Assembly (NCBI GenBank): GCA_002269645.1
Contig: NIVC01001390.1
Location: 186,001 to 250,000, forward strand
Source: Macrostomum lignano
Lineage: Eukaryota
Length of the DNA: 64,000 nucleotides
Direction of reading: 5' to 3'
The notes beneath the pieces were generated by a model that worked only from the letters and a program-made list of their open reading frames with translations, had not been told where the DNA came from and made no database searches. Of the stretch, positions 57,808 through 64,000 are shown piece by piece. The translations under genes and the position numbers were made by a program. The number at the start of each line of letters is the position of its first letter. Within the stretch, counting starts at the first letter, position 1.

Positions 57808-59370
57808 TTATGAGGCTCGAGCTTCAGTGACACTCCCAACTGCATTCCCGGCACGTCCACTCTTTGAAATGCACCAAGCCAGAGTATCGAACAGCAGCTC
57901 AAGCAGTTCGCACAAAGTCAGCAGTGACATGCCCAGGTAAATTCCCATAATGCCTCCGAGATCCGCTACAAAGTTCACCACGCCGTACTCCCTTGAGAAC
58001 ACCACTTTATTGCAGAGTGCGGCATTTGGCTTAAAAGCACATTCTCTCGAATATATGAGGCGACGCTCGATGCGTTTCCTGTCATGAGAAAGTCTAACGC
58101 AGGTACACTGAGGTTACGGGTCTTGGCTTGAGCCCAGGCCTTCCTCACCGAGCTGTTGATGAAGTTGGCAAGCGAGCTTTTGGTCGGCCACGTGGCGCTG
58201 GAGATGCTCACCTTGTAGTGCAGGCTGGTGCAAGGGCGCTGCAGATGGCAGATTTTTTTCGATATTTGCTGTCTTATCAATAAAAGCGTCAAACTGTTTC
58301 GCGACTGATTTTGACAAGCTAGGCTCGCCGGTCAAGTTGAAAGCATGGTTCTTCCCTCTCAAAGGCCACGGTAGAGGGCCGATCCCTCCGGACATGTTGA
58401 ACAGTTCTTGAAGGGCTTGGTTATACAATGTGAAGTAGCAGTAGGAATAGCTGTAGGTGTGATTGTACGGGCTTTCATCGTACGGATTCACAAACTGCAC
58501 AACGGATTTGTCACTGCGACACGAGAACTGGTCAGATTGGTACTCCTGCTGCAGCATCTCGATATTGACCGTGTGGTGCTTGTCCGGACCCAGGACGAAC
58601 GAGCTCACGAACTCGGACTGGTATTCGCCTGGCGGCGCGAGGAGCACTCGAATTCCGGGCTTCTGTCTGGCTCGAAGCTGTCGCGCAGCAGAAGAGACCA
58701 TTCCCAGACCGAGAGCAGACTGTAGTTTGAGTACACCATGCGCTCGATCGGCTCGCCCTTGGATTCGATCTCCGATGCGTTCGAGTCGTGAAGAAGCGTT
58801 GCAGTGACGCCGGCCCAGGAGCCCGACTTCAGCACAGCGCTCTGCAAGTCTTTTTCCAACGTCCATTTGGAGCATCGAAGGTAGACTGGATGGTAGAAGC
58901 TGATTGGGCTTTTTGGAATGTAAAGAGGAGTTCCCATGTTCGAGCGAAACACTAAACCACTTGCAATAACTGTTTGCTCTTCCCTGTGGGCCAGCGCGTC
59001 GACCATAAGCGAGTACGGAAGAGAGTGCAGATTTTCGAATTTTCTTTGTTGTATTACTCATCAGAGAGTTGATGGCTTGCGCCATTTCCTTGTCTACATT
59101 CACTGCGTAGCTGGCTGACACGGGACTTTCATGGCAGGCGTAAATATCCGGAAACTGGAACTTGACGGAGTTCGCTTCAATCGAGCTGGTTTGCGGATTG
59201 TCGATGAGTTTCTCAGTGAATCGAGCCAAGCAGTTCAAAAACAAGGCAAACATAAACAAGAACAATGCTAACCACGTGAGCCTGACGAATCGCGGTTTCT
59301 CGCTACTGACCGTTCTCGGCAGTCCGTGAGCACTGCTGGACTCCAGAGCTGAAAGCAACAGTTGCTTCAT
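57808..59370 (-). pseudogene. Intronless DEG/ENaC (amiloride-sensitive sodium channel family) gene with four frameshifts, ~520 codons
   Basis: SSAHG pre-TM1 motif, TM1 WLALFLFMFALFL, FPDIYAC, GIRVLL, PC..LHY, and DLGGIMGIYLGMSLLTLCELLEL (TM2 with GxS filter). The coding signal switches frame at ~59040, ~58665, ~58255 and ~58035. Confidence 0.85.
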
Positions 59371-60024
59371 GCTGCGAAGCTGATTTCTCTTCTAGGGGAA
59401 ATCCATCTAGCTCTACAGCTTTTCAAGCTATACTTTTATGCTCGTAGCCATCTGTCTGAAGGCCGATTGCGAACATTTATAGCTCATGCAACCCATCTAA
59501 TCTCTTAATTGACTGCTCACTAGCAAAGGCTTGTGTCAATTCGGCCTAGCTAACTTCCGTTGTCTGTCTTGCAGCTTAGTGAGCTACATCAACTGACAGT
59601 TACAGACTCAGCAACATGGAAAACTGAGCACCCAAAATCGCTGATCAAATTTAGTACGTATCTGCAGATTTCCAGTGCAATTAGCACAATTCAAACCACA
59701 CCACGGGCCCAATGGGGCTTTCTAGACAGCTATCACAATGAAACACTGTTTTGCAAGCGTATTTATCTGGAAAAATCACAATCAGACTTGAGTTCGTTGC
59801 TCTGCCCGTCTCTCTAGACTTTGTTTAGATTAGTATCCAGTTTGCACGGCGCACAACATCGAACAAAATTTTTTTGCACCAAAAGTTTTTTCAGCAAGAT
59901 GGTGACGTTAAAAGTCTTGATTTGAATTGCGTCACTCTGAAAATCTGAAAAATTACTAAATGAATTTTGGTATTCAATTTTCAATGTAGCCTTGTGTAGT
60001 GGGTCACAATAAAAAATTCAGTAC

Positions 60025-60640
60025 AAATATGGGGAATTCGGTACAGTATGGGAATTCGGTACAATATGGGGAATTCGGTACAATATGGGAAATTCGGTAC
60101 AATACGGGGAATTCGGTACAATATGGAGAATTCGGTACAATATGGAGAATTCGGTACAATATGGAGAATTCGGTACAATATGGAGAATTCGGTACAATAT
60201 GGAGAATTCGGTACAATATGGAGAACTCGGTACAATATGGAGAATTCGGTACAATATGGAGAATTCGTTACAATATGGGAAATGCTGTACAATAATGGGG
60301 AATTCGGTACAATATGGGGAATTTGGTACAATATGGGGAATTTGGTACAATATGGGAAATTCGGTACAATATGGGGAATTCGGTACAATATGGGGAATTC
60401 GGTACAATATGGAGAATTCGGTACAATATGGAGAATTCGGTACAATATGGAGAATTCGGTACAATATGGAGAATTCGGTACAATATGGAGAATTCGGTAC
60501 AATATGGAGAATTCGTTACAATATGGGAAATGCTGTACAATAATGGGGAATTCGGTACAATATGGGGAATTTGGTACAATATGGGGAATTTGGTACAATA
60601 TGGGAAATTCTGTACAATAATCGGGAATTTGGTACAATAC
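60025..60640. repeat. 19-bp minisatellite
   Basis: AATTCGGTACAATATGGAG. Confidence 0.95.
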
Positions 60641-61154
60641 TAGAAATCAGCGGTTGAGCCAACGAATAATGGAATATTTTTAATAAACTGCATGTATGTG
60701 GTTCGACCTATCAGCCTTGACAGCAATCCCCCCCTGAAAACATGAAATCTTAGCAATTACCCCCGAGCCTTGACATCTCAGAAATTTCCCAAGAAATCTT
60801 TTTATGTTCAACATTTTTTTAATTTTTAATTTCAATTTTTTAAATAACGCTTCTTAGTTCTTTTAGGTTTTACGTAACGCTTCATATATTTTTACGTGAC
60901 GCAATTCTTTTGTGTTTTACATGACGCTTTTGCTCAAATCAATCGCATATCCATATACACAAAAAAAACTATTTTTAGTACATAGGATTAATAATTAGAA
61001 TACATCAGCCTCAGTACGAGAGCATTGTAATTTCTCGAACTCGTGTCGAATTATTGTTGAAAATACAGGAGCGTGCTATACAACATATCTTTCCTCACAA
61101 CATCATAGTGGTCCAGTTTCATTAAATTCTGGCTTTTAACACACCCACTATTCT

Positions 61155-61367
61155 GCATGCAATGGCGGGTACAGCACGCCTGTGTAGCATGAGACAGATT
61201 AGGCCTACGGGCTAAGGTCTGCGATCCTACACACCTGCACCCCCTCTATTCTGGTGCAGGAATGGCAGGAGAACTCTCTCCAAGCTGACTCGCAAGCCGA
61301 CCCAGGGGTTCACGCCCCGCATGTGTTCAAGGCAGCTCTAGGGCTGCTGGACTGACTGGGCTCCGGC
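61155..61367 (+). ncRNA. Candidate HDV/CPEB3-like self-cleaving ribozyme at the LINE 5' end
   Basis: Hand-traced nested double pseudoknot: P1 GCATGC 61155-60 / GCATGT 61319-24 (G1.U wobble); P2 CCCAG 61301-05 / CTGGG 61356-60; P3 GGG/CCC around L3 TTCACGC; J1/4 GT; P4 GGCAGC/GCTGCT; J4/2 CTGA. Confidence 0.6.
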
Positions 61368-64000
61368 GGCGGCAACCCATCCGTGGCCTTTTGGCCAAGT
61401 TGGGTACGGGCTCCGCCCGGAAGTGCACCTGTGCGTATCAGGTACCTCTGGCCACGGCTCTGAGGAAAAGGTACCACCCTCTGACCTTAACAGGGTATGC
61501 GGCCAGTCCGCAGGCTCCGGAGGCAGTACATCCTCCTGCTTCCCTCAAGGGCCCAGTGTAGTACCGTGCTGTTGGTCCTTTGGTTCGGCCTCTGGTTTTT
61601 CCAAGCCGGGCTCTTAGCCGGGGAGTTTCTCGGTTGCTAGCGGTCGGGCCGGTACGGGCTTAAGCCACCCCCCGGTCGCTACCTCTTGGCCTGGTTGCTG
61701 GGTTTGGGGTTACGGCCCAGCGGCTTCTCACCTTTAGTCCCCACTCGCCTTTTAGTGACTCATGGAGTATTCATTTACCTCCGACACGTCCGAGGCTGCT
61801 GGAGCACCAACCGAGGTTGGCACCGCGGCCCAGCCGGACATTCGCAACACCGGAACCCCCGGTGCCTCTCAATCTGCCGCTGCCGCCGCTCAGTATAATA
61901 CCGGAGTGGCTGGACAAGACAGCGGACCTCAGATTTCTTCAAAAAGAAGACCCGTTGCATTGCTCGCTACAAAGCCTTTCTCCAGCGCAAAGCGGAGGAA
62001 CGGAGGAATGCGAAAGCCGCCCCTCCGGCCACCTCTGAGGAGGGTGCCGGTAACTCTGCGAACCCCGCGGAGCCGACATCCGACAAGGGGGTGGACCCCG
62101 CGCGCCGGTCTGATGCGTCAGGTGCCGCTGAAGCTCCTGGTGCGGCTGGCCCCTCCCGTGACCGGACCTCTGCCCGTGTGGAAGCTCCCACGGCCGTGGA
62201 GGGATCCAAAGCGGGGGGCGCTGGCCAAACCACAAAGCCGAAGCGAACCTACGCGGCTATGGCCAAAAGGCAGCCGGCCCTGGTTATCCAAGGCCAGGAG
62301 ACGCCTCTTACGGCCGAACAGCTTGACCTTATCTGGCGCAGGTTTGACTCCCACCTGGTCAAGATGGCCTTGAACAGCACTACTATTCGAGTCCAAAAGA
62401 CGAAAGTCGAGGACCAAGCCCTCTATATCCAGCCCGCCGACAGCCAGTCAGGACAGCAGCTCCTCGAGCTGCTGAAAACCTTCGACTGGGGTACGGAGCT
62501 GGAGAACCTGTTCATCTACAGGGAGGACGAGCGACCCCGGACACACCGGCACCGTGCCTGGATCCCGGCTCGCAGCTGCATTACCAAGGCAGACGAGCTG
62601 CGTCACCTGCTAGTGGCTTCCAACCCGGAGCTACCGGCCAACGGTGTCGTAGTTCACGAGACCATCTCCAAGCCAGGCGGAGACGGTTTCACGGCTATTC
62701 TTGGACTGTCGGACAGCTGGATGCTCCGCTACCCGGACATGTCCATCATCTCTGTCGGGCTGTTGCAGATTCAGCTCTTTAGCTTTGAGTCTGACGCCAC
62801 CCGCCCACCGCCCCCGGAGAAGCGTAAGCGGGCAGTCGGGGGCTCTGCCGGGTGGAAACGCCCAGGAAAAGAAGCTCCCGGTCGTCACGACCCCTCCGAG
62901 GACGTGGACCCTGTCAGAGGGAAAGCCGCGAAAGCTGCAGCAACAAGGCGGACGTGGAAAGGGCCGGAAACCCGCCCGAAACACTATCCGCTCTGGTCTG
63001 ACTCAGCGCGCGAAGCAGCTGCTGGACACCGCCAAGGCCCCCAACCGCAGCCACCCCCAGCCCAGTGTCACCACTGCGGCCCCCCCGGAAAACCGGGCCG
63101 AGAGCGAGAATGCCGCCCAGGTAGCGACCTCGCCCTCGACCATGGAATCCATCCGGGAGGAGCCCATGGAGCTGGAGCCTGGAGCTATCGGCGAGGCAGA
63201 AGAGGCAGCTCTCCTGCACAACTCGCCTTGAGCCGGCAGGAAGCTGCGCGGACCACTCGTGGAATTCCCGGAGTGGACATCCTGCAGCTTAACCTGCACC
63301 ACAGCATCGCGGCCTCGACCAACCTGATGCGGGTGGCAAACTTTGCGAAACCGGGCATCATCCTGCTCCAGGAGCCCTGGACAAAGAAAGGTAAGATTCC
63401 GAATATTCCTGCTGGTTTTGACTGTTTTCAAGACCCCCAAAACCCCAGAGCAGCCATTTTCGTTTCTACCCACCTCAGAGCTTGGCACAGACCGGACCTC
63501 TCTGACAGAGACCTCTGTGTCATTCAGTCCAACGACATTATCACCAACCGCACGGTCATCATCGCCTCGATCTATATCCCTGGCGATGGCCCCGTGGTTC
63601 CACCCAACCTCACCTCCCTCGTGGACTACTGCTCTAACCGTAGGTTCGAGCTGCTGGTGGCGGGCGACATCAACGCTCACCACACCCACTGGGGCAGTAA
63701 TACTTCCAATGGCAGAGGCGAGGAACTCCTTGCTTACATCTGCACCACCAACACTGAGTTTTGCAACATTGGAGGAACCCCCACCTTTGACAACGGGCGA
63801 TGGACGGAGGCCCTCGACGTTACCCTCGTCTCCCATGGCTTGGCTCCTTTAGTCAAAGACTGGGAGGTGTGGGATGAAGAGGAGTCTCTGTCTGACCATC
63901 GCTTTGTTCGTTTTCGTTTGCAATCCTCTTGCCCCAAGCCTCACATTCTGTGGAAAAGGAACGTCCGGAACACTGATTGGACGGCTTTCACGGAAACCCT
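61155..64000 (+). mobile_element. Non-LTR retrotransposon (LINE), LOA/R1 group; 5' portion, runs off the window
   Basis: GC-rich leader from ~61155. ORF1 with TYAAMAK and RAWIP...LLVASNPEL (DUF4780-like, from recall). AP endonuclease from ~63270: ILQLNLHHS, LLQEPW, AGDINAHH..WGS..NGRG, SDHRFVRF. Confidence 0.92.

What the first reader, a model, noticed from the sequence alone, without database searches (positions are those of the whole stretch)
61155..61367. HDV/CPEB3-like self-cleaving ribozyme with a 140-nt structured insert at the 5' end of a LOA-type LINE
Seen in sequence: every element of the HDV fold occurs in the right order. P1 is GCATGC (61155-60) with GCATGT (61319-24), including the G1.U wobble. 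P2 is CCCAG/CTGGG, extended by GCCG 61296-99 / CGGC 61364-67. P3 is GGG/CCC closing L3 TTCACGC (as I recall, human CPEB3 L3 is TTCACGT). J1/4 is GT, giving a single-pair P1.1 as in CPEB3. P4 is GGCAGC/GCTGCT. J4/2 is CTGA, fitting C-N-R-A with the catalytic C at 61352. G1 coincides with the AT-rich to GC-rich boundary where the element appears to start. J1/2 (61161-61300) is a string of hairpins (61181-61233 with a cUACGg tetraloop, 61234-61260, 61268-61281). Known: HDV-like ribozymes process the 5' ends of R2, RTE, L1Tc and Baggins-type retrotransposons and can support translation. Inference: this element self-cleaves between T61154 and G61155. Caveat: P1 is 6 bp rather than the canonical 7.
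Basis: partly seen in the sequence, partly recalled or inferred. Interest (0 to 1): 0.85.

Follow-up and report, generated by a model that had tools for sequence, protein, structure and literature searches.

The report
HDV-like ribozyme heading a flatworm LINE
The first ~213 bases of a flatworm (Macrostomum-type) LINE retrotransposon fold like a hepatitis-delta-virus-type self-cutting RNA, and related copies keep that fold through compensating mutations, so it is very probably a new example of a known trick that retrotransposons use to trim their own RNA to its exact start.

Summary
My HDV-style descriptor hits the 64-kb window once on both strands, at 61155-61360.

The motif alone is not significant: shuffled windows give 0.35 hits each. 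Three other results make the case:
- G61155 is the first base of the LINE. A related Logan contig, L001 (ORF1 about 51% identical), starts at exactly the homologous G.
- Across the window, L001 and a second relative, L064, 96% of pair cells form standard pairs. Four pairs change on both sides and stay paired (P1, P2 twice, and the P1.1 pseudoknot). Controls with partners slid by 1-3 columns give 34-44% pairing and no such changes.
- An unrelated LINE without RNase H (L002) has a textbook HDV-like core with a 127-nt J1/2 insert upstream of its ORF.

The 140-nt J1/2 insert is a conserved multi-hairpin domain closed by a P1.2-type helix. A 6-bp P1 and J1/2 inserts of hundreds of bases are already documented for R2 ribozymes.

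Weak points: no Rfam hit, only three or four sequences, the J4/2 "CNRA" rule is not kept within the family (only the C is invariant), "LOA-type" is unproven, and catalysis is untested.

Verdict: a new member of a known kind.

The parts
61155..61160 (+). P1 5' strand GCATGC. The predicted cleavage site is between T61154 and G61155, and G61155 is the first base of the LINE.
   Evidence: Pairs with 61319-24. L001 starts at the homologous G. The third pair is A-U here and C-G in L001.
61165..61293 (+). J1/2 peripheral domain: a multi-hairpin insert closed by a P1.2-type helix, GCGGGT 61165-70 with ACTCGC 61288-93.
   Evidence: MFE fold. RNAalifold with L001 shows two compensatory and two one-sided changes in the closing helix and conserved inner hairpins.
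61296..61305 (+). P2 extension 5' strand GCCG (61296-99), bulged A61300, and P2 5' strand CCCAG (61301-05).
   Evidence: P2 has two compensatory pairs across the window, L001 and L064; the extension is invariant.
61306..61318 (+). P3 GGG/CCC closing L3 TTCACGC (61309-15). C61311 pairs with G61325 to form P1.1.
   Evidence: The L3 pattern U..xCGx is kept in all four sequences. P1.1 is C-G in the window and U-A in L001.
61319..61326 (+). P1 3' strand GCATGT (61319-24) and J1/4 GT (61325-26).
61331..61348 (+). P4 hairpin, GGCAGC/GCTGCT with loop TCTAGG.
   Evidence: P4 is 10 bp in L001, 8 bp in L064 and 9 bp in L002 (by eye). Its length varies, as is usual for P4.
61352..61367 (+). J4/2 CTGA with the candidate catalytic C61352, P2 3' strand CTGGG (61356-60), and P2 extension 3' strand CGGC (61364-67).
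   Evidence: The C is invariant in four sequences; the three bases after it vary.
61368..61761 (+). The rest of the 5' UTR: a row of hairpins conserved in L001 and L064.
   Evidence: Alignment and RNAalifold: 89 predicted pairs, 21 with a compensatory change.
61762..63231 (+). ORF1, starting at ATG 61762 (MEYSFTSD...). In this copy two frameshifts interrupt it, near 61941-47 and 62914-21.
   Evidence: tblastn of the intact L001 ORF1 (P0004) and of P0009 onto the window, protein alignment, and the ORF list.
63282..64000 (+). Start of ORF2 (APE-type endonuclease domain), which runs off the window end.
   Evidence: Pfam Exo_endo_phos_2 at 1.8e-18. 71% identical to L001 ORF2, which also has RT and RNase H domains.

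Best explanation
Window 61155-61367 is an HDV-like (nested double-pseudoknot) self-cleaving ribozyme that forms the first ~213 nt of a non-LTR retrotransposon. The element encodes an APE endonuclease, and its close relative L001 also encodes RT and RNase H. Its nearest protein matches are from Macrostomum lignano.

Inferred mechanism. When the element is transcribed as part of a longer RNA starting upstream, the ribozyme folds. P1 stacks on P1.1 and P4, and P2 stacks on P3. C61352 in J4/2 then catalyses scission of the bond between U61154 and G61155. This releases a LINE RNA whose first base is G1 with a 5'-OH. Full-length reverse transcripts therefore carry the whole ribozyme into each new copy.

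The 140-nt J1/2 insert is a folded peripheral domain. Its closing helix (P1.2) holds the outer ends of P1 and P2 together, an arrangement shown experimentally to speed up large HDV-like ribozymes.

Shown here: the fold elements, their conservation and covariation, and the coincidence of G1 with the element's 5' end. Inferred: catalysis, its co-transcriptional role, and any role in translation.
For: 1. All helices and junctions are at the stated positions.
2. It is the only descriptor hit in the window on both strands.
3. Logan contig L001 is a full-length relative; its ORF1 is about 51% identical (tblastn onto the window; 52%). Its first base is the G homologous to G61155.
4. On the alignment of the window, L001 and L064, 96.4% of cells form standard pairs. 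Four pairs change on both sides: P1 A-U to C-G, P2 C-G to U-A, P2 G-C to A-U, and P1.1 C-G to U-A. Slid controls give 34-44% pairing and no double changes (table).
5. The J1/2 domain keeps its closing helix and inner hairpins through compensatory changes.
6. L3 keeps U..xCGx and the J4/2 C is invariant in four sequences.
7. L002, a LINE without RNase H whose ORF2 is 28% identical, has a canonical core upstream of its ORF: 7-bp P1, L3 UUCUCGU, J1/4 GU, J4/2 CGAA, and a 127-nt J1/2.
8. In the literature, a 6-7 bp P1 and J1/2 loops of hundreds of nt are normal in R2 ribozymes, and cleavage at the element's 5' end is known for R4, Dong, Baggins and L1Tc (PMC3774820). A J1/2 helix activates large HDV-like ribozymes (PMC4908430).
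Against: - No Rfam family matches at the gathering threshold or at E<=10, even when only the core is searched. The canonical L002 is also missed, so this test has little power here.
- The motif alone occurs 0.35 times per shuffled window.
- Only two or three sequences inform each pair, and 11 of 500 shuffles reach the observed values.
- The J4/2 'C-N-R-A' rule holds in the window (CUGA) and L002 (CGAA) but not in L001 (CUGC) or L064 (CGUG).
- Four extra bases (UCAA) lie between P1.1 and P4.
- The MFE z-score is weak, at -1.6.
- This copy has two ORF1 frameshifts, so it may be dead.
- No same-strand gene was seen immediately upstream to supply a read-through transcript.
- More distant relatives L003-L005, L061 and L063 show no such core.
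Confidence: 0.78

Rival explanations
1. This is a relic ribozyme. The fold descends from an active HDV-like ribozyme, but this copy, or the whole present-day family, no longer cleaves. The structure would be kept for another reason or simply has not yet decayed.
For: The J4/2 bases after the C vary (CUGA, CUGC, CGUG), departing from the C-N-R-A rule as I recall it for HDV-like ribozymes. P1 is only 6 bp and P1.1 is a single pair in the window. The window copy has two ORF1 frameshifts.
Against: Compensatory changes in P1 and P1.1 are hard to explain unless the catalytic fold is under selection, because those two helices matter mainly for cleavage. R2 ribozymes are reported to have little primary-sequence conservation beyond the catalytic C and four other positions, and a 6-bp P1 is common (PMC3774820). 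L001 begins at G1.
Confidence: 0.12
2. This is a structured 5' UTR with a different job, such as an internal promoter, an IRES-like element or a binding platform for the element's proteins. Its resemblance to the HDV fold would be incidental.
For: The whole ~600-nt 5' UTR is a chain of conserved hairpins with covariation, not only the first 213 nt. Rfam models give no HDV-type hit. A loose descriptor finds 0.35 hits per shuffled window.
Against: A generic structured UTR does not predict covariation in the two pseudoknot helices (P1 across 160 nt, and P1.1), the invariant C in J4/2, or the HDV-type L3. Nor does it predict that P1 begins on the first base of the element, or that an unrelated LINE carries a canonical HDV core in the same place. 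The two functions are not exclusive.
Confidence: 0.07
3. This is a chance match of a permissive motif in GC-rich sequence.
For: 0.35 descriptor hits are expected per shuffled window, and the MFE z-score is only -1.6.
Against: The expected hit density is about 3e-6 to 7e-6 per position (derived), yet the hit starts on the exact first base of the element. Homologues at about 65-73% nucleotide identity keep every helix.
Confidence: 0.03

Closest known systems
HDV-like ribozymes at the 5' ends of non-LTR retrotransposons (Drosophila R2; R4, Dong, Baggins1, L1Tc; RTE from my own knowledge of Ruminski et al. 2011, which is not held in the library)
   Same: A nested double pseudoknot at the start of the element, with the predicted cut at the element's first base. 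P1 is 6-7 bp, P4 is variable, and J1/2 is long (216-498 nt in silkmoth R2). There is little primary-sequence conservation beyond the catalytic C and a few positions (PMC3774820).
   Different: The host is a free-living flatworm. The element is a two-ORF, RNase-H-bearing LINE that is not rDNA-specific. [quoted passage not shown] No cleavage assay exists.
Large HDV-like ribozymes with a P1.2 peripheral helix in J1/2 (Anopheles drz-Agam-2 type)
   Same: A helix in J1/2 brings the outer ends of P1 and P2 together. [quoted passage not shown] Here the closing helix GCGGGU/ACUCGC covaries with L001.
   Different: Here the domain is a 129-nt multi-branch structure, not a simple helix. Its effect on rate is untested.
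Mammalian CPEB3 ribozyme
   Same: A single-pair P1.1 with J1/4 GU and an L3 of the UUCACGN type.
   Different: CPEB3 is intronic, compact (about 68 nt), has no J1/2 insert, and is not part of a mobile element. The Rfam CPEB3 model does not match the window.
Twister-variant ribozymes of Schistosoma mansoni non-LTR retrotransposons
   Same: A flatworm LINE uses a self-cleaving RNA for its retrotransposition cycle (PMC8501958 abstract).
   Different: It is a different ribozyme class (twister versus HDV-like) in a different flatworm lineage.

Membership tests
HDV-like self-cleaving ribozymes | Nested double pseudoknot: strands in the order P1-(J1/2)-P2-P3-L3-P3'-P1'-J1/4(P1.1)-P4-J4/2-P2'. | tested here: met
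   All strands are present in order at 61155-61367. The topology is as described in PMC4908430.
HDV-like self-cleaving ribozymes | The helices are supported by covariation in relatives. | tested here: met
   96.4% of cells are paired. Four pairs have changes on both sides (P1, P2 twice, P1.1), against none in six slid controls. The caveat is that only three sequences were available.
HDV-like self-cleaving ribozymes | Catalytic cytosine in J4/2, usually in the context C-N-R-A (recalled from the literature). | tested here: inconclusive
   The C is present and invariant in four sequences. The window (CUGA) and L002 (CGAA) fit C-N-R-A; L001 (CUGC) and L064 (CGUG) do not.
HDV-like self-cleaving ribozymes | L3 and P1.1 active-site signature: a 7-nt L3 with conserved U...CG, and a C pairing with the first bases of J1/4. 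| tested here: met
   L3 is UUCACGC, UCUCCGU, UUCUCGU and UUCUCGU in the four sequences. P1.1 is C-G, or U-A plus C-G in L001.
HDV-like self-cleaving ribozymes | Match to a curated covariance model (Rfam HDV, CPEB3 or drz families). | tested here: not met
   No hit at the gathering threshold or at E<=10. The canonical L002 also gives no hit, so the test is insensitive to cores split by J1/2 inserts of 127-163 nt.
HDV-like self-cleaving ribozymes | Mg2+-dependent site-specific self-scission 5' of G1, abolished by mutating the catalytic C. | not testable with these tools
   This needs an in vitro transcription and cleavage assay.
Retrotransposon 5'-end processing ribozymes (R2, Baggins or L1Tc type) | The cleavage site coincides with the first nucleotide of the element. 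| tested here: met
   The composition boundary lies at about 61155. L001 begins at the homologous G. The element is a LINE by its ORF1 and its EN, RT and RNase H domains.
   APE + RT + RNase H is present in the full-length relative L001. Several clades (I, LOA, Tad1, Ingi and others) share that architecture. No reference LOA sequences were available and no tree was made.

The most novel reading that the evidence does not exclude
The conserved 130-160-nt J1/2 domain may be more than a passive 'pinch'. It could gate cleavage or choose its site. The 3' strand of its closing helix resembles the P1 5' strand. In relative L064 that strand (GCUCGC) is perfectly complementary to P1' (GCGAGC), which would give an insert-less HDV fold that cuts about 140-160 nt inside the element. 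The family would then carry a conformational switch between a distal and a proximal cleavage site, or between cleaving and non-cleaving states. Such a switch might respond to binding by the element's own proteins. Together with the structured downstream UTR, it could couple 5' processing to cap-independent translation.
Probability: 0.1. Interest if true: 0.65.

Novelty: new member of a known kind. Interest (0 to 1): 0.42.

Why it matters
HDV-like ribozymes are known to define the 5' ends of several LINE lineages. In the held literature, the flatworm examples are a predicted R2 ribozyme in a planarian and twister variants in Schistosoma. Two searches of that literature found nothing on ribozymes in Macrostomum LINEs.

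This case adds a non-R2, RNase-H-bearing LINE from a laboratory-tractable flatworm. It also supplies a J1/2 peripheral domain that is conserved in sequence and structure, so the domain is open to comparative and mutational study. The practical value is for annotating element boundaries in flatworm genomes and as a natural test case for how peripheral domains tune HDV-like catalysis. It does not change the general picture.

Tried and rejected
- Rfam scans of the whole window (gathering), of 61050-61500 and 61290-61375 (E<=10), and of L002 200-460 gave only chance-level hits (mir-4435, Acido-1, IS1222_FSE, TCV_Pr) and no HDV-type family.
- blastn of 61001-64000 against the window found no second copy of the element.
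- A metagenome scan with ORF1 peptide patterns matched 113 stretches, none a relative.
- A metagenome scan with the conserved 17-mer GGGCTAAGGTCTSCGAT gave 55 loci, all chance matches with no extended similarity.
- Look-ups of the M. lignano UniRef-only proteins P0001 and P0002 found them not on record. The P0008 contig had no DNA available.
- The more distant ORF2 relatives L003, L004, L005, L061, L062 and L063 show no convincing HDV-like core under strict, relaxed or core-only descriptors. L062 lacks its 5' UTR, and L065 is too short.
- A relaxed descriptor (free J4/2, 1-nt gaps) proved too permissive to be useful.
- MAFFT could not align L002 with the family or keep P4 in register for L001. 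The pair table was therefore built from explicit coordinates, and P4 was left out of the formal count.
- An alternative P1 5' strand, GCGTGC at 61071, can pair with P1' using two G.U pairs. I rejected it as the main site because L001 homology and P1 covariation point to 61155.
- I tried to tell whether L001 comes from RNA or DNA by looking at its 3' flank. This was uninformative.

Full report
**What is there**

Window 61155-64000 is the 5' part of a LINE.
- Frame analysis shows a long open frame to the window end. Pfam finds an APE-type endonuclease domain (Exo_endo_phos_2, 1.8e-18).
- The best protein matches are Macrostomum lignano gene models at up to 89% identity, so the window is very probably from that flatworm or a close relative.
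- A full-length relative, Logan contig L001 (6492 bp), has a 5' UTR of about 600 nt, a 525-aa ORF1, and a 1232-aa ORF2 with endonuclease, RT and RNase H domains.
- In the window, ORF1 starts at ATG 61762 and ends at 63231. Two frameshifts interrupt it, near 61941-47 and 62914-21. ORF2 starts around 63282.

**Check of the observation**

| Element | 5' strand | 3' strand or note |
|---|---|---|
| P1 | GCATGC 61155-60 | GCATGT 61319-24 |
| P2 extension | GCCG 61296-99 | CGGC 61364-67 |
| P2 | CCCAG 61301-05 | CTGGG 61356-60 |
| P3 | GGG 61306-08 | CCC 61316-18 |
| L3 | TTCACGC 61309-15 | loop closed by P3 |
| J1/4 | GT 61325-26 | G61325 pairs with C61311 (P1.1) |
| P4 | GGCAGC 61331-36 | GCTGCT 61343-48 |
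| J4/2 | CTGA 61352-55 | C61352 is the candidate catalytic base |

- The AT-rich to GC-rich transition lies at the element's start.
- A pseudoknot-free MFE fold of 61155-61372 recovers the J1/2 hairpins, the P2 extension, P2, P3 and P4. It leaves both P1 strands unpaired, as expected for a pseudoknot. The energy z-score is only -1.6.

**Is it more than chance?**

My HDV-style descriptor hits the real window once on both strands, at this site. Block-wise dinucleotide shuffles give 0.35 hits per window and 0.02 per 2.8 kb of the GC-rich part. The motif alone is therefore weak evidence. The expected density is a few per million positions, so a hit whose G1 is the very first base of the element is not expected by chance.

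**Related sequences**

*L001.* Its ORF1 is about 51% identical (tblastn onto the window; 52%), and its 5' UTR alignment with the window has a mean column identity of 73%. The contig begins with GCCTGCAATGGCAGGG, which puts its first base exactly at the G homologous to G61155. Whether that contig end reflects a repeat boundary or an RNA end, it says the element starts at G1.

*L064.* This JGI metagenome contig has an ORF1 42% identical. It is truncated inside the J1/2 domain but carries the whole core.

*Pair table from explicit coordinates:*

| Helix | Window | L001 | L064 |
|---|---|---|---|
| P1 | GU CG AU UA GC CG | GC CG CG UA GC CG | not in contig |
| P1.1 | CG | UA + CG | CG |
| P2 | -, GC, AU, CG, CG, CG | AU, GC, AU, CG, UA, CG | AU, AU, AU, CG, CG, CG |
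| P2 extension | invariant | invariant | invariant |
| P3 | invariant | invariant | invariant |

No helix pair is broken. The only unpaired cells are the second P1.1 position, which is U/U in the window and L064.

*Formal count.* On a MAFFT alignment, 96.4% of 56 cells are paired and four pairs change on both sides. Six slid controls give 34-44% pairing and no double changes. 11 of 500 shuffles reach the observed values. With three sequences this is modest statistically. However, the covarying pairs include both pseudoknot helices (P1 and P1.1), which are specific to the HDV fold.

*L002.* This Logan contig carries a LINE whose ORF2 is 28% identical and lacks RNase H. Upstream of its ORF2, at 227-432, it has a textbook HDV-like core:
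- 7-bp P1 GGTGGAG/CTCCACC, and P2 GGTTG/CAATC.
- P3 GCC/GGC, and L3 TTCTCGT.
- J1/4 GT, a 9-bp P4, and J4/2 CGAA.
- J1/2 of 127 nt.

Cores split by a long folded J1/2 therefore recur in at least two LINE lineages in these data.

**The J1/2 insert**

- In the window (140 nt) and L001 (163 nt) it folds into a multi-branch domain. The closing helix is GCGGGU/ACUCGC in the window and GCAGGGCGC/GCGCUCUGC in L001.
- That helix shows two compensatory and two one-sided changes. An inner hairpin (AGGCC-NNNG-GGCUAAGGUCU) is nearly invariant.

**Comparison with what is known**

- For R2 ribozymes the literature says P1 is 'typically 6 or 7 bp'. J1/2 loops run from 216 to 498 nt in silkmoths, and P1 and P1' can be over 700 nt apart.
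- The same source says P4 and J1/4 are variable, and that little is conserved beyond the catalytic C and four positions. It lists R4, Dong, Baggins and L1Tc as cleaving at the element's 5' end (PMC3774820).
- A planarian R2 ribozyme was predicted in that paper. S. mansoni LINEs use twister variants (PMC8501958).
- Two literature searches found nothing on ribozymes in Macrostomum LINEs.

**Weak points**

- No Rfam covariance model matches. The same is true for the canonical L002, so the test has little power.
- The J4/2 bases after the C vary within the family: CUGA, CUGC, CGUG.
- Four bases separate P1.1 from P4.
- The window copy has a broken ORF1.
- More distant relatives L003-L005, L061 and L063 show no such core.
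- 'LOA-type' remains a guess. Several clades share the domain architecture, and no tree was made.
- Catalysis is untested.

**Verdict**

This is a new member of the known class of HDV-like ribozymes that process the 5' ends of non-LTR retrotransposons. It sits in a flatworm LINE and has a conserved, structured J1/2 peripheral domain. Confidence in the HDV-like fold under selection is about 0.8. Confidence that this particular copy cleaves efficiently is lower.

Noticed in passing
L064:76-114: In relative L064, the homologue of the P1.2 3' strand (GCTCGC, 76-81) is perfectly complementary to P1' (GCGAGC, 109-114). That pairing would form an insert-less minimal HDV-like fold cutting at G76. The same strand is 5/6 complementary to P1' in L001 and 4/6 in the window. 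It could be an alternative P1, a switch, or a trace of a shifted cleavage site.
   Followed up: partly
L002:227-432: There is a canonical HDV-like ribozyme motif (7-bp P1, L3 TTCTCGT, J4/2 CGAA, 127-nt J1/2 made of two hairpin domains) upstream of the ORF2 of an unrelated LINE that lacks RNase H. It comes from another sequencing run (ERR13948519). Rfam does not detect it.
   Followed up: partly
window 61368-61761: The rest of the LINE 5' UTR is a chain of hairpins conserved in L001 and L064, with 21 of 89 predicted pairs showing compensatory changes. Examples are the blocks GGGTACGGG..CCCGG, CAGGTACC and GGCCACGGC. It may be an IRES-like element or a protein-binding platform.
   Followed up: partly
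window 61941-61947 and 62914-62921: ORF1 of this LINE copy switches frame twice, out of and back into the frame of its start and stop. This means either two indel mutations in a dead copy or homopolymer indel errors in the assembly.
   Followed up: partly
window 60015-60639: A minisatellite lies about 500 bp upstream of the LINE: a 19-bp unit, AATTCGGTACAATATGGGG, repeated 32.7 times at 91% match. A shorter 22-bp repeat with 3.1 copies lies at 60858-60929.
   Followed up: no
window 58114-59370 (- strand): An open frame on the minus strand has an amiloride-sensitive sodium channel (ASC/DEG-ENaC) N-terminal domain (Pfam 3.8e-16). It points away from the LINE, so the nearest gene found is divergent. 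No same-strand upstream gene was seen that could supply read-through transcription.
   Followed up: partly
window 61071-61076: GCGTGC, 84 nt upstream of G61155 in the flank, could also pair with P1' using two G.U pairs. This is a weaker alternative P1 that would place a cut in the flanking DNA.
   Followed up: no
L003:174 / L004:1: Logan contig L004 begins at position 174 of the NCBI contig L003, which encodes the same 1284-aa LINE protein. This hints at that family's 5' end. No HDV-like core was found there.
   Followed up: no
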